Source: Pristiophorus japonicus (taxonomy: Eukaryota). Taken from it: a stretch of DNA of 64,000 bases. Each line of letters starts with the position of its first letter. The first letter of the stretch is position 1. A program made the translations under genes and the position numbers. The stretch covers positions 344,038,001 through 344,102,000 of the forward strand of contig NC_091977.1 of assembly GCF_044704955.1 (NCBI RefSeq). The letters run 5' to 3'. The notes beneath the pieces are model-generated. The model was not told where the DNA came from and ran no database searches. It was given only the letters and a program-made list of their open reading frames with translations. Of the stretch, positions 3,391 to 51,975 are shown one piece after another.

Positions 3391-3735
3391 AAGATAGCAC
3401 CTCCATGGAAATGGCAGAAAGAAATATTGAGGAATTTCACCCATTACCGGCAGTAGTAGCACAGGGCTGTAGATGCGAAGATTGTGAGCCCTAGTCGGTG
3501 GGAGAGTTATGAAATCAAGAAGAATAGATGTTATATGTGTAATGGCAATCATACCGCACAACAGTGTCGGTTCAAGTGGACAAGGTGCTACCGGTGCCAA
3601 GTAAAGAGACACATTGCAGCCGCATGTAAACCAAGGACAGGCCCAACGATATTCAAAGATTTAACTGGGTGGAAAGCGATCAGAACAGTTAGGTTTTGCT
3701 CTATAAGTAGTGAAGGGCAAGGCAGTACATTCCTT

Positions 3736-4897
3736 GGGCCCAAGTTTCCACACGATAAAAAACGGGCGCCTCTCCGAGCTGGGCGCCCATTTTTCGTGAT
3801 TCTGGAGCGCCCTGCAGCTCCTTGTCTGGTGCGGCGCCCAGGGGGGCGGAGCCTACACTCGCGCCGATTTTGTAAGTGGGAGGGGGTGGGTACTATTTAA
3901 ATAGTTTTTTCCTGCCGGCAACACTGCACGTGCGCGTTGGAGCGTTCGCGCACACGCAGTGTGAAGGAAACATTGGCACTCGGCCATTTTTGTAGTTCTT
4001 TGTAGCTGTTTAATTTTTGAACATTTTTTAATAAAACCACATTGCCATCAGCACTGAGGCTTCCCTTCTCACTGTCTCCTACCCCCTCCCTCCCGTTCGC
4101 GGGAACGACGCTGAGCTGACTAAGGCTTCCACCTCAAGTGGAAGGCTGCTTGCTGCCTAGTTACTGCCTGCCTGCCCCTCACTCCCTCCCCTCCCGTTCG
4201 CGGGAACATCGCTGAGCTGACTGTAAGGCTTCCACCTCAAGTGGAAGGCTGCTTGCTGCCTGGTTACTGCCTGCCTGCCCCTCCCTTCCTCCCGTTCGCG
4301 GGAACGACGCTGAGCTGACTGTAAGGCTTCCACCTCAAGTGGAAGGCTGCTTGCTGCCTGGTTACTGCCTGCCTGCCCCTTCCTCCCGTTCGCGGGAACG
4401 ACGCCACATCGCTGAGCTGACTGAAGCACTTTCACACAGGTAGGAAGATGGTTTATTTAATCTTTTTTTTGCTTATAAATGTTTATTCAGGTTGGATTTA
4501 TTTGTATAATATTTGTAGAAGTATAAATAAGGATTTATTATAGAATTTAATGACTTTCCTTCCCCCCCCCCCCCCCCATCTCGTTCTGGATGCCTAATTT
4601 GTAACCTGTGCCTGATTTTTTAATGTGTAGAACAGGTTTTTTCAGTTCTACAAAAATCTTCACTTGCTTCATTCTACTTTAGTTTGGAGTACGTTTTCAC
4701 TGTGGAAACTTTCAAATCAGGCGTCAGTGGCCGGACACGCCCCCTTTTGAAGAAAAAATTCTGTTCCAAAGTGGAACTGTTCTACCTGACTAGAACTGCA
4801 GAAAAAAAAATGTGGAGAATTGCGATTTCTAAGATAGTCCGTTCTCCACCAGTTGCTCCTAAAAAATCAGGCGCAAATCATGTGGAAACTTGGGCCC
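3736..4897. mobile_element. Non-autonomous PIF/Harbinger-type MITE with internal minisatellite
   Basis: 21-bp TIRs GGGCCCAAGTTTCCACA(C/T)GAT (1 mismatch); 3-bp TSD CTT at 3733-3735 and 4898-4900; inserted between Gypsy gag and protease. Confidence 0.9.
4082..4428. repeat. Tandem repeat of about 95-100 bp (about 3.5 units) inside the MITE
   Basis: TCCCGTTCGCGGGAAC recurs at 4091, 4192, 4290 and 4384; full units also carry CTTCCACCTCAAGTGGAAG. Confidence 0.9.
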
Positions 4898-7294
4898 CTT
4901 ATGTCAGGATTTCAGAACGTTAGTACTGATAATCGATGGATTAAAATGACAATAGATAGCGCGGCTGATTGCTCAATAATGAGTCAGGATGTATATTGCA
5001 AGAATTTCAGGGGCATACCACTAAAGGCAAGCTTAGCAAAGCTGAAAACATATTCGGGGGAAAAACTGCAGATGCTTGGACAAATGAAGTGTCTAGTACA
5101 ATATCAGGGGCAACAAGCAATATTACTATTATTATAGCGAAATACATCAATCGGTCGACACATATAGGCAAAGGTTGGCTAAGAATGCTTCGTTTGGATT
5201 GATACAGCATCTGTAGTGCAGAAATGGTCAAGTCTCGGCTAGATACTCTGCTGGAGACATGTGCTAACATGTTTGAGGATTCATACAAGGGCATCAAGGG
5301 ATACAGTGCACATGTTCGGATTAGGTCGGATGTCAAACCTATTTTTTGTAGATCAAGGCCGGTACCGTATGCAATAAAATCACAGGTTGAGCAAGAGCTT
5401 GATAAGTTGGAGAAATAGAGAGTTTTAGTGAAGACTGATAGGAGTGACTGGGCCACCCCATTAGTTGTAGTGCCGAAGGCAGACAAAATGATACGGCTCT
5501 GTGGGATCATAAAATTACCCTGAATCGTGCAGTTGATGGTGAACAGTACCCTTTACCGACATCACAGGACCTCTGTGCATAACTGGCGGAAGCCAAAGTC
5601 TTAACAACATTGGATCTCTCCAACTCTACGCCGACAAGTCAGCAGTATCTGCCAGTCAACACACACACAGATTTATATTCGTACACTAAGTTGCTCTATA
5701 TCAAGTCCTCACCAAAGATATTTCAGACTCCCATGGATCAGATCTTACAGGGAATAAATTACTGTTTGTGCAATCAAGATGATGTGTTGATGGCCACCAG
5801 CACAGAGAAGGAAAACCTGGAAATCTTAGAAGTATTCAGATGGTTCAATGACCATAATCTGAAGCTGAAGAGGAGTAAATGTACATTCATACAGCATGAG
5901 GTGGTTTATTTAGGATTGCGAGTAGATAAAAATGGTCTCAAACCAGTTAAGGAGAAAGTGCAAACGTCATGATGGCTCCAGAGCCAAAAAACGTTACTGA
6001 ATTATGATCCTTTTTAGGGATGGCCCAATATTCTCGTTTCCTTCCTGGACTAGCAACGGTGCTCGCTCCACTCCACTCCACTCCAGAGCAGCAGAATGCA
6101 TATGACGCATGCAAGCGACGCTTGAGCAGTTGTGCTCTTATCCATTATAATTTGACTTGTGGACTAAGACTAGCATGTGATGCTTCTGGGTATGGTGTGG
6201 GAGCAGTGATCAGCCATGTTATCAATGATGGGCAAGAAAAATCGGTTGCCTTTACATCGCGTACACTGAACAAAAGCAAACAAAATTATGCTCAGATTGA
6301 GGAAGAGACTTTGCCAATTATATTTGGCATGATAAAGTTTCACCAGTTTCTTTTGGAATACCAATTCATGCTAGTAACCGATCACAAACTGTTATTATGG
6401 CGGCGACCAGGATGCAAAGATGGGCTATTTTATTGTCTCAGTACGATTACAAAACCGAGTATCGTACGTCGAAGCAGAATGCAGTGACGGGTGCCTTTTC
6501 AAGGTTGTCTCATGAAGATTCTGAAGTTGGTCACGAGCAGTCAATCTTTACTCTAGATGTAATTGATGAGGACTTTCCAGTCACCACCTCTATTATTGCA
6601 GAGAACACACACAAAGATGCCACGTTACACTGGGCCTATGAGCACACTCTGCGAGGGTGGTCTGAAGATCAGACTCATTTGGAAGAGGGGATAAAGCTCG
6701 TTTATCATCGTCAGCAAGAATTATCGTGTGAGCAGGGATGTCTAAAATGGGCCTGAGTAGTCAATCCCAGTGCACTACAGGTCAAAGTCATGGTGAGCTT
6801 ACTGGCATTGTGTAGGCATGAAAGTGGTAGTCCGATGTTTTGTCTATTGGCCTGGGTTGGATAAAGCCTTAGTCCACTTACTTACTAATACTTCTATCAG
6901 TCAAGACTGCAGGCCCATGCCAGCTAAAACGTCGTTGCAAACATAGACTTGGCCAACGAGACCATTCCAAAGAATACATACTGATTTTTGCGAGAGGGGC
7001 AGTGATAACTTTCTGGTTCTAATTGATAGCCATTCGAAGTGGCTGGAAGTACAGCATATGGGGTCATCTATGACTACAGAGCGTATATTGGGTGAATTAC
7101 GGGATATTTTTGAATGCCAATAGTGTCAGATAATGGGCCTCAATTTCGGTCCACACCACACAATTTGCGAATTTTGCCAGATGCAACGGTATCAAACACA
7201 CGTTGGTAGCACCATATCATCCTGCTTCGAATGGTGCAGCTGAAAGGTTGGTCAGGATTGTCATGGAGGCTTTGTGCATCATTGGTGAGCATGA

Positions 7295-10200
7295 CTGGAT
7301 CATTGGCAGGACCGGAACCAATGTCCTAGGGGGAGTGTTTGCTAGTGCTGTTGGGGAGGAGTTAAACTAATATTGCAGGGGGATGGGAACCTATGCAGGG
7401 AGACAGAGGGAGACAAAAATGAGGCAAAAGCAAAAGACAGAAAGGAGATGAGGAAAAGTGGAGGGCAGAGAAACCCAAGGCAAAGAACAAAAAGGGCCAC
7501 TGTACAGCAAAATTCTAAAAGGACAAAGGGTGTTAAAAAAGCAAGCCTGAAGGCTTTGTGTCTTAATGCAAGGAGTATCCGCAATAAGGTGGATGAATTA
7601 ACTGTGCAAATAGATGTTAACAAATATGATGTGATTGGGATTACGGAGACGTAGCTCCAGGATGATCAGGGCTGGGAACTCAACATCCAGGGGTATTCAA
7701 CATTCAGGAAGGATAGAATAAAAGGAAAAGGAGGTAGGGTAGCATTGCTGGTTAAAGAGGAGATTAATGCAATAGTTAGGAAAGACATTAGCTTGGATGA
7801 TGTGGAATCTATATGGGTAGAGCTGCAGAACACTAAAGGGCAAAAATCGTTAGTGGGAATTGTGTACAGACCTCCAAACAGTAGTAGTGATGTTGGGGAG
7901 GGCATCAAACAGGAAATTAGGAGTACATGCAATAAAGGTAGAACAGTTATAATGGGTGACTTTAATATGCACATAGATTGGGCCAGCCAAACTGGAAGCA
8001 ATACGGTGGAGGAGGATTTCCTGGAGTGCATAAGGGATGGTTTTCTAGACCAATATGTCGAGGAACCAACTAGGGGGGAGGCCATCTTAGACTGGGTGTT
8101 GTGTAATGAGAGAGGATTAATTCGCAATCTCATTGTGCGAGGCTCCTTGGGGAAGAGTGACCATAATATGGTGGAATTCTGCATTAGGATGGAGAATGAA
8201 ACAGTTAATTCAGAGACCATGGTCCAGAAATTAAAGAAGGGTAACTTTGAAGGTATGAGGCATGAATTGGCTAAGATAGATTGGCTAATGATACTTAAGG
8301 GGTTGACTGTGGATTGGCAATGGCAGACATTTAGAGACCGCATGGATGAATTACAACAATTGTACATTCCTGTCTGGCGTAAAAATAAAAAAGGGAAGGT
8401 GGCTCAACCGTGGCTATCTCGGGAAATCAGGGATAGTATTAAAGCCAAGGAAATGGCATACAAATTGGCCAGAAATAGCAGCGAACCCGGGGACTGGGAG
8501 AAATTTAGAACTCAGCAGAGGAGGACAAAGGGTTTGATTAGGGCAGGGAAAATGGAGTACGAGAAGAAGCTTGCAGGGAACATTAAGGCGGATTGCAAAA
8601 GTTTCTATAGGTATGTAAAGAGAAAAAGGTTAGTAAAGACAAACGTAGGTCCCCTGCAGTCAGAATCAGGGGAAGTCATAACGGGGAACAAAGAAATGGC
8701 AGACCAATTGAACAAGTACTTTGGTTCAGTATTCACTAAGGAGGACACAAACAACCTTCCGGATATAAAAGTGGTCAGAGGGTCTAGTAAGGAGGAGGAA
8801 CTGAGGGAAATCTTTATTAGTCGGGAAATTGTGTTGGGGAAATTGGTGGGATTGAAGGCCGATAAATCCCCAGGGCCTGATGGACTGCATCCCAGAGTAC
8901 TTAAGGAGGTGGCCTTGGAAATAGCGGATGCATTGACAGTCATTTTCCAACATTCCATTGACTCTGGATCAGTTCCTATCGAGTGGAGGGTAGCCAATGT
9001 AACCCCACTTTTTAAAAAAGGAGGGAGAGAGAAAACAGGGAATTATAGACCGGTCAGCCTGACCTCAGTAGTGGGTAAAATGATGGAATCAATTATTAAG
9101 GATGTCATAGCAGCGCATTTGGAAAATGGTGACATGATAGGTCCAAGTCAGCATGGATTTGTGAAAGGGAGATCATGCTTGACAAATCTTCTGGAATTTT
9201 TTGAGGATGTTTCCAATAAAGTGGACAAAGGAGTACCAGTTGATGTGGTATATTTGGACTTTCAGAAGGCTTTCGACAAGGTGCCACACAGGAGATTAAT
9301 GTGCAAAGTTAAAGCACATGGGATTGGGGGTAGTGTGCTGACGTGGATTGAGAACTGGTTGTCAGACAGGAAGCAAAGAGTAGGAGTAAATGGGTACTTT
9401 TCGGAATGGCAGGCAGTGACTAGTGGGGTACCGCAGGGTTCTGTGCTGGGGCCCCAGTTGTTTACATTGTACATTAATGATTTAGACGAGGGGATTAAAT
9501 GTAGTATCTCCAAATTTGCGGATGACACTAAGTTGGGTGGCAGTGTGAGCTGCGAGGAGGATGCTATGAGGCTGCAGAGTGACTTGGATAGGTTAGGTGA
9601 GTGGGCAAATGCGTGGCAGATGAAGTATAATGTGGATAAATGTGAGGTTATCCACTTTGGTGGTAAAAACAGAGAGACAGACTATTATCTGAATGGTGAC
9701 AGATTAGGAAAAGGGAAGGTGCAACGAGACCTGGGTGTCATGGTACATCAGTCATTGAAGATTGGCATGCAGGTACAGCAGACGGTTAAGAAAGCAAATG
9801 GCATGTTGGCCTTCATAGCGAGGGGATTTGAGTACAGGGGCAGGGAGGTGTTGCTACAGTTGTACAGGGCCTTGGTGAGGCCACACCTGGAGTATTGTGT
9901 ACAGTTTTGGTCTCCTAACTTGAGGAAGGACATTCTTGCTATTGAGGGAGTGCAGCGAAGATTCACCAGACTGATTCCCGGGATGGTGGGACTGACCTAT
10001 CAAGAAAGACTGGATCAACTGGGCTTGTATTCACTGGAGTTCAGAAGAGTGAGAGGGGACCTCATAGAAACGTTTAAAATTCTGACGGGTTTGGACAGGT
10101 TGGATGCAGGAAGAATGTTCCCAATGTTGGGGAAGTCCAGAACCAGGGGTCACAGTCTAAGGATAAGGGGTAAGCCATTTAGGACCGAGATAAGGAGAAA

Positions 10201-10451
10201 CTTCTTCACCCAGAGAGTGGTGAACCTGTGGAATTCTCTACCACAGAAAGTAGTTGAGGCCAATTCACTAAATATATTCAAAAGGGAGTTAGATGAAGTC
10301 CTTACTACTTGGGGGATCAAGGGGTATGGCGAGAAAGCAGGAATGGGGTACTGAAGTTTCATGTTCAGCCATGAACTCATTGAATGGCGGTGCAGGCTAG
10401 AAGGGCTGAATGGCCTACTCCTGCACCTATTTTCTATGTTTCTATGTTTCT
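7295..10451 (+). mobile_element. Young 5'-truncated CR1 LINE (end of ORF1, ORF2, 3' tail)
   Basis: 14-bp TSD ATTGGTGAGCATGA (7281-7294 and 10452-10465); ORF1 end RTGTNVLGGVFASAVGEELN*; (TTTCTATG)n tail. Confidence 0.95.
7373..10354 (+). CDS. CR1 ORF2 (APE endonuclease plus reverse transcriptase), interrupted only by TAG at 7652-7654
   Basis: LNARSIRNK, GITET*, YRPP, MGDFN, SDH; RT motifs KSPGPDG, YLDFQKAFD, GVPQGSVLGP, FADD. The 869-aa ORF 7745-10354 is in frame with ORF 7373-7654. Confidence 0.9.
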
Positions 10452-12000: not shown

Positions 12001-12862
12001 GGCGCGCTTTTGGTGATACAGGTAGTTATATATCAATAATTGAACATATACAGCGGAGGATTTGGGTAAAACTGTATCCTTCAACTCTGAGAAACACCAC
12101 CAATGTATTACATTATTAAACTCTGTACGTAGGACCTGTGTTTCAATATAAAGCTTGCCTCTGTGGCAAAATACACTTACCTGTCCTAATAATTGTATCA
12201 GGACGGCACTGATAGGAATTTTCATGTGAAGGATGTCATGCATTGCCTGTCACAGATACACCCATGCTTGGTTTTATGCACATTAAGTGCCATGTTATAG
12301 TGAAGGTATATGGTAGTTTACTTTAACTATTTTAATCTCTTATTAACTTCTTTTAGATTTAGCATTTTTTTATTTTACTTATAAAACCCTTTTCCCTTTT
12401 TGGCCGCCTAGCCCTATTTTTTGCCATCTTGCTCATAATCTGCCTCCAGCCACCCAGAATATAACTATTCAAAAAAAAATTAACTTCTTGTCAGCCTTTT
12501 TCTCACTTTAATGTTTTAAGTGTGCATGTGTCTTTTGTATATGTCTTTGTCGGAATGGTTAATGCTGAATTTTGCTGTAAAAATGTATTTTACCTGGCAT
12601 TTGGGCCAAGTCTTCCTGGAAAACTAACGACCAGTTCACGGTGCACACCATTATGAATGCACAAATCGACCAAGTTCAGAGGATGAAAACTTGGTCAATT
12701 TATGCAAATGCATACAAATGGCATCTCACCCTGAGCACCCCTGTTATTTTTTAAGAACTTTCTGGATTTCCATATTAATTGACCATTAAACTCGCAGCTC
12801 ATCACTAACCTTGTGAGTACCCTTTTAACGACGGGATAATTGTTGATGCCATGCCACTCAGT

Positions 12863-13976
12863 GGGCCCAATTTTGGCCATGACTTGCATCAATTTTTTTG
12901 GAGTAAGTTTTTTCTGGCGTAAGTTTAAAAAAAATACAATTTTCCCCAAAATATTTGCTCCAGAGTAAGTCCGTTAGGTACGATCTTTTTTTTAGTTCAG
13001 TTTTTTTTTTCAAAAGGGGGCGTTCCCAGACACTTACGGCAGTTTTGGCCATTTATGCCATTTTGGCCAGCTAAAAGTTACTCTAAATCCACTTTGATCA
13101 GCATATGTGGCCAGCTCTGAAAAACCTTGTGGGCAGTTAACAAATCGGTGCAGGTAGGACCTGCAACAAGCACCAAGCAGCAAATATTCAATATAAAAGT
13201 TCAAATAACTACATAAAAATAGGGTAAACAATTGAACAACAATTAAAAAAAATTGTATTAAATCCTACCTTTAGTTGAAATCGGCCGGGGAAGGCAGCGG
13301 GTCGGGTCGGGAGAGTGGGGAGGGAGAGGAAAGGCTGGTCTCGGCAGCATCTTTATAAAGTAGAACTCAAACTGGTTTGTTGTTTGCCCCTCAGTTGACT
13401 TTCATAAAATGGGACTGCACATGGTCTTCATAGGCAGCTTGTCTGTTCTCTGGAAAGGTCCTCTGGCACACTGGACACTCGTAAACAAAGTGCTTCACAA
13501 CGTGCTGCTCGAAATCAGAGTCCTCCAGGTTGAGCATGAAGACGACCTCACACACTGGGCACTTTTGGCTGTCAATGATCTCCTCTTCGGTATCCTATGA
13601 ATTCCCCTTGCCATCCTGGCTCTGCACCAAGTCAATGCTTGCACCGGTCTGCGATCCTTCAATATCAGAGAGTGCCGCAGGCCACTCGGCCCGGGATAGG
13701 GACGGCGTGCTTCGGCCCCTCCCACACAGCGTCGGGCTGCGAGGAGCTACTGCACATGCGCGCACACTCGAGGTGCATGTGCAGAGGTCCCGGCACTGTT
13801 TTCAGCACCAGGACCTGGCTCCGCCCCCGAATCGAGTTGCCACGCTGCGCCACCATCGGGGAGAGGCTGGGGAGCGGCCAAAATGGGCCTGAAGATTTAT
13901 GCCGCTCTAATCGCTCCACAAAAGTGGCTGACCTTTGCTAAGTGCGCCAGAATTTGTACTGGCCAAAATTGGGCCC
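12863..13976 (-). mobile_element. Harbinger-type MITE carrying a captured host-gene fragment (Pack-type)
   Basis: Perfect 17-bp TIRs GGGCCCAATTTTGGCCA; both arms align in reverse to 26967-27791; TSD not preserved (AGT/ATC). Confidence 0.85.
13391..13678 (-). pseudogene. Captured C-terminal fragment of a CALCOCO2 (NDP52)/TAX1BP1-family gene: tandem UBZ-type C2H2 zinc fingers
   Basis: Minus-strand translation AALSDIEGSQTGASIDLVQSQDGKGNS*DTEEEIIDSQKCPVCEVVFMLNLEDSDFEQHVVKHFVYECPVCQRTFPENRQAAYEDHVQSHFMKVN*. Two CPxC..F..(F/Y)ExHVxxH units end at a stop; internal TAG at 13595-13597. Confidence 0.8.
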
Positions 13977-15219
13977 ATCCCCTCTTGCCCAGAAAGAGAA
14001 CAATTTAAACTGTTGAATGTAGTAAATTGTTACGACTTTTTAAAAATGTCAAATTTTGTATTTTTTTTTCTTACTTTTCTCTCCGTCTCTCGCTCTCTCT
14101 CAATCCAATCTTTCGTTTTCTTTTTCTGCACCTGATTTGACTCTAATTCACCCTCCTCCTCCTCTGTTTCTTTCTTGATCCTTAAATCTCTTTCTTTCAC
14201 AATTCGTAAATCTCATTGGTTAAAGAGTGATACTGTTGGTCTTGTCATTCACTGAGGTCCCAGATGCTCTGTTCCCCTTGCACTCCCAGCAAGTTATTAG
14301 TACAAATTATATTCGAACTAAAGGGTGCAGGAAAAAGTCTGTGCATGCAGCGAGGTGCACCACCCCAGCAAGATTTGACCCATTGATACCTGCTCATACT
14401 GTTGCTCCTAGAACCCAATACCCTTGTACTGAACATCACCAAAGTGTCCAGTTCTGCTGTGGTAACCGTCTTTATGATTTCCGAATGGGACCAGAATCAC
14501 AGCATTTTTAGCACTCATGTCCAGAGTCACAGAAAGTCACCAGGACTCATGAGCTCAGCACAGGCAGAGATGGAGACAATGGGCCTTTGGAGAGGGAGAG
14601 AAGTGGCTGTTGTAATTACCATATCAGGCACAGTTCAACTTCACTCCCACTCTTGATTTTAAAGTTTGGCCCTGCTCCTCTGTGTCGATCATATCGACTA
14701 GCAAATGCCAATTCCACTTTGTCCTGACAGTTACTAACCAATTTTCCATTGTTTTTGCAGTAGAATCTGTTAAACTGGCATCCATTCAAATTATTAGAAT
14801 TGTTTGTAAAATAAAATTGCCTGCTATTCGATCTTTAGAAATTTGTATTATGATAACATGGTTAAATGTACATTTATATTCAGTTTTAAAGCTCTAATAG
14901 AAGAAATGCAAAAATTCCCCTCCCTCTGAACACACCCAACTCCCCACTCCAGATCACCTCGCCTCCCCACTTCCCCCTTCTCTCTGGGCTTACTGTACTG
15001 GTATCACTCATTCAACTTGCTTGGGGCTCCACTCTAGTCTGGGGTCCTTCAACAGTCTTGGATTCTTTCACCCCTTCTCCTGCTCCCTGCTTCCAAGCCC
15101 TCTAACTTTTCTTTAGTCATTTACTCTCCCCATTTCGCTGGCCACGAATCATGCTCCTTCTTTCCCATGTACCCCTGTTTTTTTAACTCTGTTCCACATC
15201 CATCATCACAGTCCTCCTG

Positions 15220-26290: not shown

Positions 26291-26966
26291 GAAGAATCAT
26301 ATCCACATCTTCTGCCTCCAGACACAGATTTCCTTTGTGGTCTCTAATAGGCCCCACTCTTTCTCTAGTTATCCTCTTGCTCTCAATGTATTTATAAAAC
26401 ATCTTTGGATTTTCCCTGATTTTACTTGCCAACATTCTTTCATGCTCTCTTTGCTTTCCTGATATCTTTTTTAATTACACCCCTGCGCTTCTTATACTCC
26501 TCTAGCATCTCTGCAGTATTGAAGTCTCGGAATCTGTCATCCAGTGGGGTGCTAGATTTGTTAGCCCCATCTTTTTTTTTATAAAGAGAACATGCTTGCT
26601 CTGTACTCTCAGGATCTCCTCCTTGAATGCCTCTCACTTCTCTGACACTGATTTACCATCAAGTAGCCGTTTCATATTCCCCTTGTCCAAATCCCATCTC
26701 AGCTTAGCGAAATTGGCTTTACCCCAATTGAGAACTTTTTTTCCTGGTCCACCTTTGTCCTTTTCCGTAACTGCCCTGAATCTTAATGAATTATGATCAC
26801 TAGCACCAAAATGCTCTCCCACTGAAGCCCCTTCATTCCCCAAAATCAAGTCCAGAATCGCCCCCTCCCTTGTTAGGCTTGTTTCATACTAGCTAAAGAA
26901 TTTCTACTGAATGCATTTTAGGAATTCTGCACGATACCATTCACACTGCTTTTTTTCCCAGTTAAT

Positions 26967-27791
26967 GGGCTCAAAATGGGCCCATGCCGATCTTTGGCGT
27001 ACTCACCTGAGTTGATCAGCTTTTCTACATTTCCAAGCGCGCCAAAAAAAGATGTCCTGACTTTGACCACTGTCCGGCCTCTTCCAGGTCTTCGTGCAGC
27101 GTGGCCAGTCGAGTCGGGGGCAGAGCCAGTGTCCCGCGCTGAAAACAGTGCTGGAACGTCTGCACATACGCGTTGGAGCAGTAGCTCCTTGCTCCCAGCA
27201 TCTCTGTGTGCATCCCGCCCCAATCCCAGGCCGAGTGGCCAAATATTAAACCGACCCAACTCTCTTGCCTCGTCACGGGCTTTTACCCTTGTGATATCGA
27301 AGTCACCCTCCTGAGAAATCGCGAGCCAATCACTGACACGGAATCCAGTGGCATTCTACTACTTGTATTTTTGTAGTTTAAGCTTCCATGAATGCTTCTG
27401 TTGTATATTAAATTAACGTTGCGGAAGTTTGTCATATAGCTGTTTGATCCTATTCACATTCCTTAGTCAAGTCATTAAGTTCTGCTGGCCTCCGATGTAC
27501 CTACCTGCGCTGATTTCTTCACTCTCCTCAAGGGTTTTCACAAGTGGCCACATATGCTGGCCTAAGTTAGTTTGGAGTAACTATTAACTGGCCAAAGTGG
27601 CTTAACTGGCCAAAATGGGCGTAGGTGGCTGGTAACGCCCCCTTTTGGAAAAGAAACAAAACTAAAATAATCCTAACCAACTCACTTACACTGGCAGAAA
27701 TTGAATGTGTAAAATGTGGATTTTTAAGATACTCCAGAAAAATCAAGTTACTCCAAAAAAAACGGAGCAACTCCTGGCCAATTTTGAGCCC
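26967..27791 (+). mobile_element. Harbinger-type MITE carrying a captured MHC class I-like fragment (Pack-type)
   Basis: TIRs GGGCTCAAAAT(G/T)GGCC; 3-bp TSD AAT (26964-26966 and 27792-27794); arms homologous to 12863-13976. Confidence 0.9.
27242..27358 (+). pseudogene. Captured Ig C1-set fragment, most like an MHC class I alpha-3 domain
   Basis: Translates NIKPTQLSCLVTGFYPCDIEVTLLRNREPITDTESSGIL: the C1-set signature LxCxxxGFYPxDIxVT followed by a ..SGIL(P)-type strand. Confidence 0.8.
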
Positions 27792-28257
27792 AATATTAGG
27801 GTAATTGAAATCTCCCATTATTACAGCTCTATAGTTTTTGCACTTTGCAGCAATTTGTTGTTTTATCTCCCTCTGACTGGGTGCCTATAGTACACTCCCA
27901 GTAGTGTGATTGGCCCTTTTTTGTTCTTCAATTCAACCCATATGGCCTTGTTTGATGACCCCTCTAACATATCATCCCTTCTCAAACCTGTAATTGATTA
28001 TTTAATTAATACTGCGACCCCCCCTCCTTTTTTTAACCCCTCTTTATCCCATTCGAAAACCCTGTAACCAGGAATGTTGAGCTGCCATACCTGTCCCCCT
28101 TTCAGCCATGTCTCAGTAATGGCTATAATATTGTACTGCCAAGTGTCTATCTATACACTCAGTTCATCTGCCTTATTCCCTATATTCCTTGCATTGAAGT
28201 ATATGCTATTTTGTAGTGCCAAACTCCCTTGTCTATTTTCCAGCCCCTGTTTCCTCT

Positions 28258-43430: not shown

Positions 43431-46400
43431 TGATACGTCCTTACTACACAGTATAAATGCACACGAGGCCCATGCTTGAGAGAAGGTCAGTCTGTGACCT
43501 GTCCTTTATTCCTCAGCACTCAAGTGATGAAGGTGGGTGGAGCTTCCCCTTTTATACCTGAAGGTCCAGGTTAGGAGTGTCTCCCACCTAGTGGTCAGTG
43601 TTCTCACGGTGTACAACTTAGGTCAGTTTATACATGGGTTACAATGCTGGTTGAATACATGACATCACCTCCCCCCCAAAAGTCTTATTGGGATCACAGG
43701 TTGAGTCTCTCTGGTGGTTTACGCTCCCTTGTAGAGCGCCTGAGTTGGGGCTCCGGTTGTTGGGCGCTGGCCTGAGTGTCTGCTGTTTGCGGTGCCTCAG
43801 GCCTGTCCGGACTGCTCCCAGTGACTGGGCTCTCCTCCCTTTGGTTCCGGTGTTCGGTCACCTGTGGTGGAGTGAACTCTATATCGTGTTCTTCCTCTGC
43901 TTCTTTTATGGGGTTGCTGAACCTCCTTTTTGTTTGATCCACATGTTTGCGGCAGATTTGTCCATTGGTAAGTTTAACGACCAGAATCCTATTTCCCTCT
44001 TTGGCAACCACAGTGCCTGCGAGCCATTTGGGCCCTGCAGCGTAGTTGAGGACAAAAACAGGATCATTTACATCAATACATCGCGCTCTCGCATTCCTGT
44101 CATGGTAGTGATATTGTGACTGGCGCCTGCTCTCGACAATTTCTTTCATGGTGAGGTGTATAAGGGATAATCGGGTTTTGAGCGTCCTTTTCATTGGCAG
44201 CTCTGCGGGTGGAACCCCTGTGAGCGAGTGTGGTCGGGATCTATAGGCCAACAGGAGGCGTGTTAAGCGCCTTTGTAGGGAACCCCCTTGGAATCTGAGC
44301 ATCCCCTGTTTGATTATCTGCGCTGCTCGTTCTGCCTGGCCGTTTGAGGCCGGCTTGAACGCTGCCGTTCTGACATGGTTAATTCCATTGCCTGCCATGA
44401 AGTCCTGGAATTCAGTGCTTGTGAAGCACGGGCCATTGTCGCTGACCAAGATGTCCGGTAGACCGTGGGCGGCGAACATTGCCCGTAGACTTTCTACCGT
44501 GGCAGAGGATGTGCTTGAATTTAAAATGTCACACTCGATCCATTCGGAGTAGGCGTCTACGACAACCAAAAACATTTTTCCCATGAAAGGACCTGCGTAG
44601 TCCACATGGATGCGTGACCAAGGCTTGGCGGGCCATGGCCAGGGGCTAAGGGGGGCTTCCCTGGGCGCATTGCCCAGCTGGGCACACGTGTTGCACCTAC
44701 GAACACAAAGTTCCAGATCTGCGTCTATCCCTGGCCACCAAACGTGTGACCTGGCAATTGCCTTCATCGTGACAATGACCGGGTGCCCATTGTGGAGTTC
44801 TCTGATGAACACCTCTCTGCCCATCTGGGGCATGACTACGCGGTTTCCCCACAGTAGGCAATCGGCCTGAATCGAGACTTCATCCTTGCGCATGTGAAAC
44901 GGTTTAAATTTCTCAGCGCATGCCCTGTACGTGGCTGCCCAGTCCTCATTCAGGACACATTTCTTGACTAGAGACAATAGCGGGTCTCTATTTGTCCAGA
45001 CTTTAATCTGACGGGCTGTCACGGGTGAGCCTTCGCTTCCGAAAGCTTCAACAGCCATGACCATCCCAGCAGCATGGTCGGTAGCCCCCTCAGTGGTGGC
45101 TAGTGGGAGCCTGCTGAGTGCATCGGGGCAGTTTTCAGTGCCCGGTCTGTGCCGAATTGTAGTCATAGGCGGCTAACGTGAGTGCCCAGCTCTGTATGCG
45201 GGCCGATGCGTTTGCATTTATGGCCTTGTTGTCGGCCAAAAGGGACGTTAGGGGTTTGTGATCTGTCTCCAGCTCAAATTTCCTGCCAAACAGGTACTGG
45301 TGCATTTTCTTTACCGCATATACACATGCGAGCGCCTCCTTTTCTACCATCCCGTAGCCCCTTTCTGCCTGGGACAGACTCCTGGAGGCATAAGCTACCG
45401 GCTGTAACTGACCCTTGGCATTGACATGCTGCAACACACACCCGACACCATAGGACGATGCATCGCACGTTAACACAAGTTTCTTACATGGGTCATATAG
45501 CGTTAACAGATTATTGGAACATAACAAATTGCATGCTCTATTAAAAGCCCTTTCCAGGCTGTCCCCCCAGACCCATTCGCGACCTTTGCGTAGGAGCACG
45601 TGTAGCGGCTCTAGCAGCGTGCTCAATTTGGGAAGAAAGTTACCAAAATAGTTCAGGACCCCCAGGAGCCAACGCAGCTCCGTCGTGTTACGGGGTCTGG
45701 GTGCTCTCTGGATCGCTTCCGTCTTGGATGCAGTAGGGCTGATCCCGTCTGCTGCTACCCTCATCCCCAGGAATTCTACCTCTGGAGATAGGAAGACGCA
45801 TTTCGCCTTTTTCAGTCGCAGACCTACCCGGTCCAGTCTGCGTAGCACCTCCTCCAGGTTGTGGAGGTGTTCTTCAGTATCGTAACCCGTAATGAGGATG
45901 TCGTCCTGAAAAACCACCGTCCCTGGAATCGACTTGAGGAGGCTTTCCATATTTCGTTGGAAGATCGCGGCGGCCGAGTGAATCCCGAACGGACATCTGT
46001 TGTACGCAAACAACCCCTTGTGTGTCGTGATGGTGGTCAGCTTCTTCGACTCACTCGCCAGCTTCCTGGGTCATGTAAGCTGAGGTCAGGTCCAATTTTG
46101 AAAAAAGTTTGCCACCGGATAGCGTCGCAAAGAGGTCCTCCGCTCTCGGTAGTGGGTACTGATCTTGGAGTGACACCCGATTGATGGTGGCCTTGTAATC
46201 ACCACAGATCCTGACCGACCCATCCGCCTTGAGCACCGGCACAATCAGGCTCGCCCAGTCACTGAATTCGACTGGCAAGATGATGCCTTCCCTCAACAGG
46301 CGGTCCAATTCGCCTTCTATCTTTTCCCGCATCACGTACGGCACCGCTCTGGCCTTGTACTGGTCTGGCGTCCGGGTTTATGTGAATCACTACCTTGGCC

Positions 46401-48475: not shown

Positions 48476-51400
48476 TATAAGAACATAAGAATTAGGAACA
48501 GGAGTAGGCCATCTAGCCCCTCGAGCCTGGTCCGCCATTCAACAAGATCATGGCTGATCTGGCCGTAGACTCAGCTCCACTTACCCGCCCGCTCCCCGTA
48601 ACCCTTAATTCCCTTATTGGTTAAAAATCTATCTATCTGTGACTTGAATATATTCAATGAGCTAGTCTCAACTGCTTCCTTGGGCAGAGAATTCCACAGA
48701 TTCACAACCCTCTGGGAGAAGAAATTCCTTCTCAACTCGGTTTTAAATTGGCTCCCCCGTATTTTGAGGCTGTGCCCCCTAGTTCTAGTCTCCCCGACCA
48801 GTGGAAACAACCTCTCTGCCTCTCTCTATCTTGTCTATCCCTTTCATTATTTTAAATGTTTCTATAAGATCACCCCTCATTCTTCTGAACTCCAATGAGT
48901 AAAGACCCAGTCTACTCAATCTATCATCATAAGGTAACCCCCTCATCTCCGGAATCAGCCTCGTGAATCGTCTCTCTACCCCCTCCAAAGCTAGTATATC
49001 CTTCCTTAAGTAAGGTGACCAAAACTGCACGCAGTACTCCAGGTGCGGCCTCACCAAACCCTGTACAGTTGCAGTAGGACCTCCCTGCTTTTGTACTCCA
49101 TCCCTGTCGCAATGAAGGCCAACATTCCATTCGCCTTCCTGATTACCTGCTGCACCTGCAAACTAACTTTTTGGGGCTCAGTGGTTAGAGCTCTCACCTC
49201 TGAGTCAGAAGGTTGTAGGTTCAAATCCAGGGGTGAGCACATTAAACAAAAATCTATGCTGACACTCCTAGAGAAAGCACTGCACTGTCGGAGGCGCTAT
49301 ATTTCCAAAAAGAGTTTCATGCACAAGGACCCCCAGGTCCCTCTGCACCGCAGCATGTTGTAATTTCTCCCCATTCAAATAATATTCCCTTTTACTGTTT
49401 TTTTTCCCCAAGGTGGATGACCTCACATTTTTCGACATTGTATTCCATCTGCCAAAACTTAGCCCATTCGCTTAACCTATCGAAATCTCTTTGCAGCCTC
49501 TCTGTGTCCTCTACACAACCCGCTTTCCCACTAATCTTTCTGTCATCTGCAAATTTGGTTACACTACACTCTGTGCCCTCTTCCAAGTCATCTATGTATA
49601 TTGTAAACAGTTGTGGTCCCAGCACCGAGCCCTGTGGCACAGCACTAACCACTGATTTCCAACCCGAAAAGGACCCATTTATCCCGACTCTCTGCTTTCT
49701 GTTCGCCAGCCAATTCTCTATCCATGCTAATACATTTCCTCTGACTCCGCGTACCTTTATCTTCTGCAGTAACCTTTTGTGTGGCACCTTATCGAATGCC
49801 TTTTGGAAATCTAAATACACCACATCCATCGGTACACCTCTATCCACCATGCTCGTTATATCCTCAAAGAATTCCAGTAAATTAGTTAAACATGATTTCC
49901 CCTTCATGAATCCATGTTGCGTCTGCTTGATTGCACTATTCCTATCTAGATGTCCCGCTATTTCTTCCTTAATGATAGCTTCAAGCATTTTCCCCACTAC
50001 AGATGTTAAACTAACCGGCCTATAGTTAACTGCCTTTTGTCTGCCCCCTTTTTTAAACAGAGGCGTTACATTAGCTGCTTTCCAATCCGATGGTACCTCC
50101 CCAGAGTCCAGTGAATTTTGGTAGATTAAAACGAATACATCTGCTATAACTTCCGCCATCTGTTTTAATACCCTGGGATGCATTTCATGCGGACCAGGGA
50201 ACTTGTCTACCTTGAGTCCCATTAGCCTATCCAGCACTACCCCCCTAGTGATAGTGATTATCTCAAGGTCCTCCCTTCCCACATTCCCATGACCAGCAAT
50301 TTTTGGCATGGTTTTTGTGTCTTCCACTGTGAAGACTGAAGCAAAATAATTGTTTACGGTCTCAGCCATTTCCACATTTCCCATTATTAAATCCCCCTTC
50401 TCATCTTCTAAGGGACCAACATTTACTTTAGTAACTCTTTTCCATTTTATATATCGGTAAAAGCTTTTACTATCTGTTTTTATGTTTTGCGCAAGTTTAC
50501 TTTCGTAATCTATCTTTCCTTTCTTTATTGCTTTCTTAGTCATTCTTTGCTGTCGTTTAAAATTTTCCCAATCTTCTAGTTTCCCACTAACCTTGGCCAC
50601 CTTATATGCATTGGTTTTTATTTTGAAACTCTCCTTTATTTCCTTGGTTATCCACGGCTGGTTATCCCTTCTCTTACCGCCCTTCTTTTTCACTGGAATA
50701 TATTTTTGTTGAGCACTATGAAAGAGCTCCTTAAAAGTCCTCCACTGTTCCTCAATTGTGCCACCGTTTAGTCTGTGTTTCCAGTCTACTTTAGCCAACT
50801 CTGCCCTCATCCCACTGTAGTCCCCTTTGTTTAAGCATAGTATGCTCGTTTGAGACACTACTTCCTCACCCTCAATCTGTATTACAAATTCAACCATACT
50901 GTGATCACTCATTCCGAGAGGATCTTTTACTTGGAGATCGTTTATTATTCCTGTCTCATTACACAGGACCAGATTTAAGATAGCTTGCTCCCTTGTAGGT
51001 TCTGTAACATACTGTTCTAAGAAACAATCCCGTATGCATTCTATGAATTCCTCCTCAAGGCTACCCCGTGCGATTTGATTTGACCAATCGATATGTAGGT
51101 TAAAATCCCCCATGATTACTGCCATTCCTTTTTCACATGCCTCCATTATTCCCTTGATTATTGCCCGCCCCACCGTGAAGTTATTATTTGGGGGCCTATA
51201 AACTATGCCCACCAGTGACTTTTTCCCCTTACTATCTCTAATCTCCACCCACAATGATTCAACAGTTTGTTCATTAGAACCAATATCGTCTCTCACAACT
51301 GCCCTGATATCATCCTTTATTAACAGAGCTACCCCACCTCCTTTCCCTTCTTGTCTATCTTTCCGAATTGTCAGATACCCCTCTATGTTTAATTCCCAGT

Positions 51401-51975
51401 CTTGGCTCCCCTGCAACCACGTTTCTGTAATGGCCTACAAATCATACCCATTTGTAATGATTTGTGCCGTAAAGTCATTTACTTTATTTTGAATGCTGCG
51501 TGCGTTTAGGTAGAGTGTTTTAATACTAGTTTTTAAACCATGATTTTTAGTTTTGACCCCTCCTGCAGCCCCTTTATATTCATACATATTGTCCCTTCCT
51601 ATCACTTTGTGGTTTACACTTACCCCAGTGCTATTCTGCTCTGTTGCCTCCTGCCTTTTGCATTCTTTCTTGGGGTCCTGTTCATCTGAGCTCTCACCCA
51701 CTCTAACTAGCTCAGAGCTCTCTCCTGGGTTCCGAATACTCCTTGCATTGAGGCACCGAGCTTTCATGCTTGCCTTTTTTATTACCCTTTGACCCTTTAG
51801 AATTTTGCTGTACAGTGGCCCTTTTTGTTTTTTGCCTTGGGTTTCTCTGCCTTCCACTTTTACTCATCTCCTTTCTGTCTTTTGCTTTTGTCTCCATTTT
51901 GTTTCCCTCTGTCTCCCTGCATTGGTTCCCATCCCCCTGCCATATTAGTTTAACTGCTCCCCAATAGCACTAGCA
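48476..51975 (-). mobile_element. Young chimeric CR1 LINE (ORF1 end plus ORF2; longest ORF 49392-51416)
   Basis: EN motifs YRPP, MGDFN, SDH; RT motifs YLDFQKAFD, PQGSVLGP, FADD; two LNARSI motifs at the N-terminus; rc tail CATAAGAA. Confidence 0.9.
49173..49314 (+). mobile_element. Short (about 140 bp) tRNA-headed SINE, internally deleted relative of the 34862-37410 SINE
   Basis: A box GGCTCAGTGGTTAG, B box GGTTCAAATCC, GCTGACACTCC..GCACTGTCGGAGG joined directly to GCGCTATAT; interrupts CR1 ORF2. Confidence 0.75.

What the first reader, a model, noticed from the sequence alone, without database searches (positions are those of the whole stretch)
13345..13679. Tandem UBZ zinc-finger (CALCOCO2/NDP52 or TAX1BP1-like) 3' end captured in a MITE
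Seen: the minus strand encodes ..KCPVCEVVFMLNLEDSDFEQHVVKHFVYECPVCQRTFPENRQAAYEDHVQSHFMKVN*, preceded by about 38 in-frame codons (one TAG) and followed by about 45 nt of putative 3' UTR. Known (recalled): C-terminal UBZ fingers mark the selective-autophagy receptors TAX1BP1 and CALCOCO1/2; the FP-x6-(F/Y)EDHV spacing of finger 2 resembles NDP52. Inference: a captured gene end. If the upstream codons belong to a separate exon in the parent gene, capture used an mRNA/cDNA template, which would be unusual for a DNA transposon.
Basis: partly seen in the sequence, partly recalled or inferred. Interest (0 to 1): 0.85.

Follow-up and report, generated by a model that had tools for sequence, protein, structure and literature searches.

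The report
Spliced autophagy-receptor gene fragment inside shark MITE
A small cut-and-paste transposon in a shark (probably sawshark) genome carries a decayed, intron-free piece of the last three exons of an autophagy-receptor gene, and about a hundred or more copies of it exist, which is a rarely documented way for a DNA transposon to pick up and spread gene sequence in a vertebrate.

Summary
The minus strand at 13391-13594 encodes two tandem UBZ zinc fingers (Pfam PF18112, 43.9 bits; TAX1BP1 structure 5aas, E 2.5e-11).

The fingers lie inside a 1116-bp element (12862-13977) with perfect 18-bp terminal inverted repeats. Two other family copies in the window share its arms but have different middles. 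Public DNA contigs show the arms at very high copy number. The middle, UBZ part included, is at roughly 100-400 times single-copy depth, and sister contigs cross both arm/cargo junctions. So the gene piece was acquired once and then amplified.

The donor gene exists elsewhere and is expressed. High-depth contigs (inferred to be RNA) match 13351-13660 at 91% and then continue with unrelated sequence on both sides. Their translation is identical to the C-terminus of Pristiophorus japonicus "tax1-binding protein 1-like", a chondrichthyan CALCOCO2-like gene.

The TAG at 13595-13597 is private to this copy. The donor and nearly all sister copies read CAG.

Isoform comparisons in three shark species and two donor-type DNA contigs place introns at 13607|13606 and 13569|13568. 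The cargo lacks both introns, so its template was very probably spliced (about 0.8).

The copy is non-functional. Interest is moderate.

The parts
12862..13977 (.). Whole non-autonomous TIR element (copy A, 1116 bp) that carries the gene fragment
   Evidence: Perfect 18/18 inverted repeat at its ends. The left boundary is sharp: 129-135 DNA contigs per run break away into unrelated, AT-rich flanks exactly at 12862 (table 7). It has no long ORF.
12862..12879 (+). Left terminal inverted repeat
   Evidence: pair I1, 100% complementary to 13960-13977.
13960..13977 (-). Right terminal inverted repeat
   Evidence: pair I1.
12862..13160 (.). Left arm, conserved in the family. It contains repeated TTTTGGCC(A) subterminal motifs.
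   Evidence: nhmmer and alignment to copies B (27500-27792) and C (4612-4898). Summed contig depth is 4e4-4e5, against about 10 for single copy.
13680..13977 (.). Right arm, conserved in the family. It is GC-rich and has a GC-box-like motif. The core 13778-13826 is extremely abundant.
   Evidence: Alignment to copy B 26966-27240. Depth reaches 6e5-9e5 in the bin 13778-13826.
13351..13660 (-). Cargo derived from the donor gene: 310 bp collinear with the donor mRNA. It covers the last 89 codons, the stop codon and 40 nt of 3' UTR.
   Evidence: High-depth contigs X6 record 31 (13351-13660, 28 differences, no gaps), X5 record 22 (13519-13660, with 1661 nt more upstream) and X5 record 20. Their translation is identical to the last 89 aa of P0125/P0222 of Pristiophorus japonicus.
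13607..13660 (-). Part corresponding to the third-last donor exon (54 of about 60 nt)
   Evidence: Sawshark isoform X3 (P0221) diverges from X1/X2 right after NPYS, 2 codons before 13660. The exon's 3' end is set by the Heptranchias X1/X2 13-aa indel directly before ENSQD and by the X1 DNA contig with donor-specific letters, whose laid part ends at 13606.
13569..13606 (-). Part corresponding to a 38-nt penultimate donor micro-exon (ENSQDTEEESID plus 2 nt)
   Evidence: It is bounded by the two inferred junctions. The donor-specific letter at 13583 is absent from all DNA contigs, as expected for a 38-nt exon that is too short to be laid.
13351..13568 (-). Part corresponding to the start of the donor's last exon: both UBZ fingers, the stop at 13391-13393 and 40 nt of 3' UTR
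   Evidence: S. torazame isoforms end ...ILAEW-stop where the full form reads ...ILAECQKC, which is read-through of a GT donor in phase 2. Short ORF calls of TAX1BP1 and NDP52 genes lose similarity 5-7 codons before the first Cys. The X1 DNA contig with donor-specific 13563A has its laid end at 13571, which fits a 'cag' acceptor.
13490..13561 (-). UBZ finger 1 (C-x2-C-x15-H-x3-H)
13409..13477 (-). UBZ finger 2 (C-x2-C-x14-H-x3-H, NDP52-type spacing)
13595..13597 (-). Nonsense codon TAG, private to this copy (ancestral CAG, Gln)
   Evidence: At 13597, A>G is seen in 554 of 566 (X1) and 1647 of 1670 (X2) depth units of sister DNA contigs and in all donor contigs. It aligns to Gln in manta P0001 and sawshark P0125.
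13161..13350 (.). Further cargo of unknown origin. It is shared with sister copies but not with family copies B and C, and not with the donor mRNA.
   Evidence: Sister contigs X2 records 12 and 13 cover 13002-13372. The donor contig departs at 13351 (table 7). There is no significant match to B or C.
13661..13679 (.). 19-nt filler between the donor-derived cargo and the right arm
   Evidence: It matches neither the donor mRNA nor copy B, and it does not match the first 6 nt of the donor exon.
26966..27792 (-). Family copy B: same arms, different 260-bp middle, 3-bp direct repeat ATT/ATT around GGGCTC...GAGCCC
3735..4898 (-). Family copy C: diverged arms, middle filled by a 98-bp tandem array, 3-bp direct repeat AAG/AAG around GGGCCC...GGGCCC

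Best explanation
Copy A (12862-13977) belongs to a very abundant family of non-autonomous transposons with terminal inverted repeats, 3-bp target duplications and PIF/Harbinger-like termini. Its internal region holds a 310-bp intron-free fragment of a chondrichthyan CALCOCO2-like autophagy-receptor gene, annotated in Pristiophorus japonicus as 'tax1-binding protein 1-like'. The fragment joins most of the third-last exon, a 38-nt micro-exon and the first 218 nt of the last exon, which holds both UBZ fingers, the stop codon and 40 nt of 3' UTR. The most likely mechanism is as follows. During repair of a break in a MITE copy, synthesis switched to a reverse-transcribed copy of the spliced mRNA and back. 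That copy was either free cDNA or a processed pseudogene already in the genome. This happened once. Transposase supplied in trans then amplified the chimeric element to the order of 100 or more copies, which have since decayed neutrally. The copy in this window has acquired a private nonsense codon and about 4-5% private substitutions. It has no start codon or promoter of its own for the fragment and is not a functional gene. Shown: the TIR element, the multi-copy status with shared junctions, the identity of the donor gene, the private TAG, and collinearity with the mRNA. Inferred from indirect evidence: the two donor introns. Inferred only: template switching, the source of reverse transcriptase, and mobilisation in trans.
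For: UBZ identity: Pfam PF18112 at 43.9 bits; TAX1BP1 and NDP52 structures. Element: 18/18 TIR; arms shared with copies B and C, which have different middles; 3-bp direct repeats flanking B and C; more than 100 contigs per run leaving at 12862 into unrelated flanks, and arm depth of 1e4-1e5 or more. Single acquisition then amplification: cargo bins sit at 1.1e3-5e3 summed depth against about 10 for single-copy contigs, and sister contigs about 90% identical cross both the arm/cargo junction (X2 record 12; X1 record 5; X5 record 23) and the cargo itself. Donor: contigs of depth 129-334 in runs X5/X6 match only 13351-13660, then continue for 1661 nt upstream and 400 nt downstream with other sequence. 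With their letters applied, the translation equals the last 89 aa of P0125/P0222. That protein family has SKICH, coiled coil and UBZ. Introns in the donor: the Heptranchias X1/X2 indel starting with Val directly before ENSQD; S. torazame ...AEW-stop against ...AECQKC; sawshark X3 diverging after NPYS; the conserved last intron seen in TAX1BP1 and NDP52 short ORF calls. The laid ends of the only two DNA contigs carrying donor-specific letters fall at 13606 and 13571, exactly as predicted for AAG|gt and cag|C. Not a local gene: tblastn of six CALCOCO-family proteins finds nothing else in the 64 kb.
Against: The inference rests on other species' isoforms and on the ends of two low-depth contigs that might have ended there for other reasons. 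Runs X5/X6 are not on record as RNA; this is inferred from their depth pattern. Copy A itself has no matching target duplication (AGT against ATC). The duplications of B and C (ATT, AAG) are not the TWA typical of PIF/Harbinger, so the superfamily assignment is tentative. Depth sums of contigs are only a rough guide to copy number. The fragment starts only 6 nt inside an exon, a near-coincidence that the model does not explain.
Confidence: 0.75

Rival explanations
1. Ordinary DNA-level transduplication (the Pack-MULE type). The MITE copied a stretch of the donor's genomic DNA, and in this species that stretch is a single terminal exon without introns.
For: DNA-level capture is the usual mechanism for TIR elements (PMC8277862). 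The fragment begins only 6 nt from an exon start. The donor's genomic structure was not read directly.
Against: Two junctions inside the fragment are supported by isoforms in Heptranchias and S. torazame, and by the conserved last intron in TAX1BP1 and NDP52 genes. They are also supported by the laid ends, at 13606 and 13571, of the two DNA contigs that carry donor-specific letters. The 19 nt upstream of the fragment match neither the first 6 nt of the exon nor an AG acceptor.
Confidence: 0.12
2. A LINE-mediated processed pseudogene inserted into a pre-existing MITE copy (nested retroposition), and the composite was later mobilised.
For: The fragment is intron-free. The window holds LINE ORF2s with long open frames.
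Against: There is no poly(A) or A-rich tail at the 3' end of the fragment (13351 and below). The donor mRNA continues at least 400 nt beyond the breakpoint. No direct repeats flank 13351-13660. A further 190 bp of unrelated cargo lies beside it.
Confidence: 0.08
3. A genuine terminal exon of a gene at this locus, with the TAG being the AG of a splice acceptor.
For: The TAG is followed by G, so an acceptor is formally possible.
Against: Homology to the donor mRNA and to manta and sawshark proteins runs straight through the TAG, which aligns to Gln. No polypyrimidine tract precedes it. No other CALCOCO exon lies in the 50 kb upstream. The stretch lies between the arms of a repeat and is itself multi-copy.
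Confidence: 0.02
4. The amplified UBZ cargo is functional, for example exonised into host transcripts as a ubiquitin-binding module or used as a source of regulatory RNA against the donor gene.
For: The majority state of the sister copies keeps an open frame over all 89 codons. Low-depth contigs of sister copies occur in the runs taken to be RNA (X5 records 21 and 23). The right arm has a GC-box-like motif upstream of the cargo.
Against: A majority-state frame is expected for any recent burst. Substitutions private to this copy are 8 non-synonymous to 4 synonymous, including a stop. There is no start codon in frame. Sister copies with 133-150-bp internal deletions exist (table 5).
Confidence: 0.03

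Closest known systems
Pack-TIR / Pack-MULE transduplicates (host gene fragments carried between the TIRs of non-autonomous DNA transposons; 370 Pack-TIRs in 100 animal genomes, Tan et al. 2021, PMC8277862)
   Same: A host gene fragment sits between the TIRs of a non-autonomous element. The parent gene lies elsewhere without the TE. Further unrelated filler lies beside the fragment. The composite was amplified by further transposition.
   Different: The cargo is intron-free across two junctions, whereas Pack-MULE cargo normally keeps introns. The animal survey discarded intron-free captures of multi-exon parents by design. A copy number of about 1e2 is high for an animal Pack-TIR. The host is a cartilaginous fish, and neither 'shark' nor 'Harbinger' occurs in that paper's main text.
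Processed pseudogenes (LINE-mediated retrocopies)
   Same: Exons are joined without introns, and the copy is a decayed, non-functional version of an expressed gene.
   Different: This is an internal 310-bp piece of the mRNA, without the 3' end, poly(A) or flanking target duplication. It lies inside a TIR element and was multiplied with that element.
CALCOCO family autophagy receptors (NDP52/CALCOCO2, TAX1BP1/CALCOCO3): C-terminal tandem UBZ, structures 5aas, 2m7q, 5aaq, 4xkl
   Same: Two C2H2-type UBZ fingers lie directly before the stop codon. Finger 2 has NDP52 spacing, and finger 1 is a full CCHH finger as in TAX1BP1. The donor has SKICH and coiled coil.
   Different: The window holds only the last 89 codons, interrupted by a stop, with no SKICH or coiled-coil exons. 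The donor belongs to a cartilaginous-fish clade that NCBI names inconsistently (CALCOCO2-like or TAX1BP1-like).
PIF/Harbinger-derived (Tourist-like) MITEs
   Same: Short size, GGGC-type termini, 3-bp target duplications in two copies, AT-rich insertion sites, subterminal repeated motifs, and very high copy number.
   Different: The duplications seen (ATT, AAG) are not TWA. No autonomous partner was examined.

Membership tests
UBZ1-type autophagy-receptor zinc finger (Pfam PF18112) | Profile match above the curated cutoff | tested here: met
   43.9 bits against a cutoff of 23.2, with two stretches.
UBZ1-type autophagy-receptor zinc finger (Pfam PF18112) | Cys2-His2 zinc ligands present in both fingers, in tandem at the extreme C-terminus | tested here: met
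   C-x2-C-x15-H-x3-H and C-x2-C-x14-H-x3-H, with the stop 5 codons after the last His.
UBZ1-type autophagy-receptor zinc finger (Pfam PF18112) | Binds ubiquitin or myosin VI | not testable with these tools
   This is a biochemical property, and this copy is interrupted by a stop codon.
CALCOCO family gene at this locus | SKICH domain and coiled-coil exons upstream on the same strand | tested here: not met
   tblastn of P0001, P0009, P0016, P0022, P0035 and P0054 against the window finds only 13394-13747. The locus is a fragment, not a gene.
CALCOCO family (donor gene) | SKICH plus coiled coil plus C-terminal UBZ in one protein | tested here: met
   The manta relative P0001 has SKICH PF17751 at 83 bits plus a coiled coil. 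For the donor protein P0125 itself, SKICH PF17751 and UBZ PF18112 are precomputed. Its C-terminus is identical to the RNA-contig translation.
MITE / non-autonomous TIR DNA transposon | Terminal inverted repeats | tested here: met
   18/18 in copy A. Equivalent termini are present in B and C.
MITE / non-autonomous TIR DNA transposon | Target-site duplication | tested here: inconclusive
   3-bp repeats flank B (ATT) and C (AAG), but copy A has AGT against ATC.
MITE / non-autonomous TIR DNA transposon | Many copies with the same ends in unrelated flanks, and no transposase ORF | tested here: met
   129-135 contigs per run have unrelated sequence before 12862, and arm depth is 1e4-1e5 or more. There is no ORF over 120 aa in the element.
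PIF/Harbinger superfamily | TWA target duplication, and an autonomous partner with DDE transposase plus Myb-like protein | tested here: inconclusive
   The duplication is 3 bp long but is not TWA in B or C. Flank consensus before 12862 ends in TAA/CTA/CAA with low agreement. No partner was searched for.
Pack-TIR (transduplicate) | Host-gene fragment between TIRs, with a parental copy elsewhere that is not flanked by the TE | tested here: met
   Donor contigs leave the element's sequence at 13351 and 13660 and continue as the gene's own mRNA. The annotated protein is P0125.
Pack-TIR (transduplicate) | Cargo collinear with parental genomic DNA (introns retained) | tested here: not met
   The cargo is collinear with the mRNA across two inferred exon junctions. 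This is indirect, because the parental locus was not read.
Processed pseudogene | Includes the mRNA 3' end with poly(A), and has flanking target duplications | tested here: not met
   The cargo ends 40 nt after the stop codon while the mRNA runs on for at least 400 nt. No A-tract is present.

The most novel reading that the evidence does not exclude
This MITE family habitually takes up spliced transcript fragments. The case here is a three-exon CALCOCO2-like piece, and two unverified first-stage notes report spliced MHC class I fragments in 'Harbinger MITEs' elsewhere in the same genome. That would point to RNA- or cDNA-templated break repair as a regular route of gene-fragment acquisition by a cut-and-paste transposon in a vertebrate, followed by amplification to hundreds of copies.
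Probability: 0.25. Interest if true: 0.75.

Novelty: new variant of a known kind. Interest (0 to 1): 0.5.

Why it matters
Gene-fragment capture by TIR transposons is well documented in plants but only sparsely in animals. The one large animal survey removed intron-free cargo by design (PMC8277862), so intron-free captures like this one went uncounted there. A multi-copy vertebrate MITE carrying exons joined as in mRNA would show that reverse-transcribed sequence can enter a DNA transposon and be spread by it. That links the two transposon classes and adds a route for exon shuffling. The roughly 100 or more copies are also a molecular fossil of the donor gene. At several sites they keep residues shared with other sharks (Lys before the first Cys, Tyr, Asn, Val) where the living sawshark gene has changed (Met, Arg, Ser, Ile). 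As a gene, however, this particular copy is dead, and nothing suggests a function.

Tried and rejected

2. The search for homologous proteins with the 67-aa piece, to find ORF calls of sister copies or of the donor's last exon: no candidate shared three words. Given the length window, this says little.

3. The idea that 13661-13679 is the 3' end of the upstream donor intron (capture from DNA or from partly spliced pre-mRNA). It is pyrimidine-rich, but it lacks the AG and does not match the first 6 nt of the exon as fixed by sawshark isoform X3. Rejected.

4. Exonisation of a MITE copy by the donor gene, as the reverse direction of transfer. Rejected because there is no AG before 13660 and no GT after 13351, and because the UBZ end is shared with rays, chimaera and tetrapod paralogues.

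5. Using the absence of donor-specific letters in DNA contigs as evidence. Rejected as uninformative, because in a de Bruijn assembly the single-copy donor is tangled with about 100 or more near-identical copies.

6. Target-site duplication for copy A, using 'empty-site' joints (12848-12856 to 13979-13989, table 5). The joints vary and give no clean duplication. Unresolved.

7. Rfam and tRNA scans of 12500-14300, to test for a SINE or RNA origin of the arms: nothing found.

8. Similarity of 13161-13350 to copies B and C: none. Its origin is unknown.

The donor-state translation was computed in a script, from the window file plus the letters listed.
Full report
**1. The observation**

It has one in-frame TAG (13595-13597), 36 open codons before that TAG, and a stop at 13391-13393. 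The 67 codons after the TAG match Pfam PF18112 (autophagy receptor zinc finger-C2H2) at 43.9 bits, against a cutoff of 23.2, in two stretches. In the PDB sequence search the best matches are the tandem UBZ of TAX1BP1 (5aas, E 2.5e-11; 2m7q) and then NDP52 (5aaq, 1.8e-6). Both fingers have complete Cys2-His2 ligands.

**2. The element around it**

- An 18-bp perfect inverted repeat lies at 12862-12879 and 13960-13977.
- Two other copies of the same family lie in the window: B at 26966-27792 (minus) and C at 3735-4898 (minus).
- Alignments show shared arms (A: 12862-13160 and 13680-13977) but unrelated middles. B has about 260 bp of other sequence, and C has a 98-bp tandem array.
- B and C are flanked by 3-bp direct repeats (ATT, AAG) around GGGCYC termini. 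A is not (AGT against ATC).
- The arms carry repeated TTTTGGCC(A) motifs.
- There is no Rfam family or tRNA in the region.

This is a non-autonomous TIR transposon with a variable cargo position. Its length, termini and 3-bp duplications fit PIF/Harbinger, but the duplications are not TWA, so the superfamily is tentative.

**3. Copy number and sister copies**

Contigs of four public runs carrying the same species label were laid on 12700-14140 at 80% or more likeness.

- In the two DNA runs, single-copy contigs of the locus itself have depth about 8-11 (records 1, 8, 9, 16).
- The arms sum to 4e4-9e5, and 129-135 contigs per run leave at 12862 into unrelated AT-rich flanks.
- The whole middle (13141-13679) sums to 1.1e3-5e3, roughly 100-400 single-copy equivalents. 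This is only a rough guide, as the tool warns.
- Sister contigs about 90% identical cross from the left arm into the cargo (X2 record 12, 13002-13216), run along it (records 13, 3, 4, 14), and cross from the cargo into the right arm (X1 record 5, 13610-13761; X5 record 23).

So the cargo was acquired once and the composite element was then amplified. At 13597 nearly all sister depth (554 of 566 and 1647 of 1670) reads G, which gives CAG (Gln) on the coding strand. The TAG is private to this copy.

**4. The donor gene**

Runs X5 and X6 are not on record as RNA. In X6, however, the MITE-only part of the cargo has zero depth in two bins (13190-13287), while one contig of depth 334 covers 13351-13660. 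In X5, contigs of depth 129-157 do the same among MITE contigs of depth 3-10. That pattern is expected for transcriptome data, not for DNA. This is my inference.

- X6 record 31 (715 nt) matches 13351-13660 without gaps (28 differences) and has 400 nt more beyond 13351.
- X5 record 22 (1806 nt) matches 13519-13660 and has 1661 nt more beyond 13660.
- Neither contig continues into the arms.

I applied the 26 listed letters of these contigs to the window sequence. This gives an uninterrupted 89-codon reading that is identical to the C-terminus of P0125/P0222, 'tax1-binding protein 1-like' isoforms X2/X1 of Pristiophorus japonicus. The window is therefore very probably from that sawshark or a close relative.

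The protein belongs to a cartilaginous-fish clade (E 1e-100 to 1e-255 among rays, sharks and chimaera). NCBI names it variously 'CALCOCO2-like' and 'TAX1BP1-like'. It is distinct from TAX1BP1 proper of the same species (about 120 bits). Its manta member P0001 has SKICH (PF17751, 83 bits) plus a coiled coil, and both SKICH and the UBZ domain PF18112 are precomputed for P0125 itself. No other CALCOCO exon lies in the window. A parent therefore exists elsewhere and is expressed, and the window holds only a fragment of it.

**5. Is the fragment spliced?**

Indirect evidence is consistent on two junctions.

*(a) Junction before ENSQD (13607|13606).*
- Heptranchias perlo isoforms X1 and X2 differ by 13 residues that begin with Val (GTN) and lie directly before ENSQD. 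This is the signature of an alternative donor at an exon end.
- Mapped to the window, this is 13607|13606 (AAG|G).
- The only DNA contig carrying two donor-specific letters (13612T, 13621G; depth 12) has its laid part ending at 13606. An AAG|gt boundary would give exactly that end. The from_end column counts to the end of the laid piece, as checked on X5 record 22.

*(b) Junction three codons before the first Cys (13569|13568).*
- Scyliorhinus torazame isoforms end ...ILAEW-stop where the full form reads ...ILAECQKC. This is read-through of TG|GTRA, so the junction lies in phase 2.
- The same last intron is seen in eight TAX1BP1 and one NDP52-like short ORF calls. Their similarity to cDNA-type proteins stops 5-7 codons before the first Cys and is replaced by Phe/Leu/Ser-rich read-through.
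- Mapped to the window, this is 13569|13568.
- The DNA contig with donor-specific 13563A has its laid end at 13571, as expected for a 'cag' acceptor.

*(c) The micro-exon between the two junctions.* The donor-specific letter at 13583 lies in the 38-nt exon between them. It is absent from all DNA contigs, as expected for an exon too short to be laid.

*(d) The 5' end of the fragment.* Sawshark isoform X3 diverges after NPYS, so the third-last exon starts 6 nt upstream of 13660.

Taken together, the cargo holds 54 of about 60 nt of that exon, the whole 38-nt micro-exon and 218 nt of the last exon, joined as in mRNA. I put the probability of a spliced template at about 0.8.

**6. Mechanism**

The fragment is an internal piece of the transcript. 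It has no poly(A), the mRNA continues at least 400 nt past the 3' breakpoint, and no duplications flank it. A further 190 bp of unrelated cargo (13161-13350) and 19 nt of filler lie beside it. This argues against simple LINE-mediated insertion of a retrocopy.

It fits template switching during repair or replication of a MITE copy, the gap-filling or FoSTeST models of Pack-TIR formation (PMC8277862). The template would be reverse-transcribed donor sequence, either free cDNA or a processed pseudogene. The two cannot be told apart here. Reverse transcriptases are plentiful: the window itself holds two LINE ORF2s and an LTR-retrotransposon pol. Amplification by a transposase in trans is inferred from the TIRs and the copy number.

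**7. State of this copy**

Relative to the majority of sister copies, this copy has 12 private changes in 310 bp (8 non-synonymous including the stop, 4 synonymous). The family majority differs from the donor mRNA at 11-14 sites. There is no start codon in frame. Some sister copies carry 133-150-bp deletions (table 5). Nothing indicates function.

At several sites the family keeps residues shared with Heptranchias and Heterodontus (Lys before the first Cys, Tyr, Asn, Val), where the living sawshark gene reads Met, Arg, Ser and Ile. The copies therefore preserve an older state of the gene.

**8. Comparison and novelty**

This is a Pack-TIR-type transduplicate, a known kind in plants that has been reported in animals (PMC8277862). 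It departs from the usual pattern in three ways:
- its cargo is intron-free, a class that survey excluded by design;
- its copy number is high;
- its host is a cartilaginous fish.

Two unverified first-stage notes (s1-874478, s1-874499) report spliced MHC class I fragments in 'Harbinger MITEs' of the same genome. If those elements are the same family, uptake of spliced sequence would be recurrent. I did not test this.

**9. Verdict**

This is a new variant of a known kind and is of moderate interest (0.5).

Noticed in passing
window 3735-4898 (minus), array 4084-4404: Family copy C carries a 98-bp tandem repeat (3.3 units, 92% matches) in the same internal position where copy A carries the gene fragment. 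The cargo position of this MITE family is therefore variable.
   Followed up: partly
window 26966-27792 (minus), middle about 27240-27498: Family copy B has a different, unidentified 260-bp middle. It is flanked by the 3-bp repeat ATT.
   Followed up: partly
window 13778-13826: This 49-bp bin of the right arm lies near a GC-box-like GGGGCGGAGCC on the minus strand. It sums to 6e5-9e5 contig depth, ten times more than the rest of the arms. It may be a core shared with other, much larger repeat families.
   Followed up: no
window 13351-13660, compared with P0125, P0115 and P0116: The MITE copies keep ancestral residues (Lys before the first Cys of UBZ1, Tyr, Asn, Val) where the living sawshark gene has Met, Arg, Ser and Ile. 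The donor's UBZ region has changed at the protein level since the capture.
   Followed up: partly
window 12700-12861 and 13978-14140: The flanks of copy A are themselves repeated (depth 250-2500). Several single-copy-depth contigs join 12848-12856 directly to 13979-13989, like paralogous empty sites. They do not reveal a clean target duplication for copy A.
   Followed up: partly
window 7745-10354 (+), 49392-51416 (-), 43694-46013 (-): The window holds two LINE ORF2 frames (869 and 674 aa, each with endonuclease plus RVT_1) and an LTR-retrotransposon pol (RT, RNase H, integrase). It is repeat-rich and offers potential sources of reverse transcriptase.
   Followed up: partly
window 13163-13280 (minus strand): Within the unexplained 190-bp cargo, an AT-rich stretch is bounded by AAG|GTAGGA and a pyrimidine tract ending in TTGCAG|G. 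It looks like a mini-intron. Its origin is unknown.
   Followed up: no
tables 5 and 5c (13313-13351, 13334/13351 to 13485): Sister copies vary around the 3' breakpoint of the cargo. Some have short duplications of the G-rich stretch 13313-13344, and some have 133-150-bp deletions that remove finger 2.
   Followed up: no
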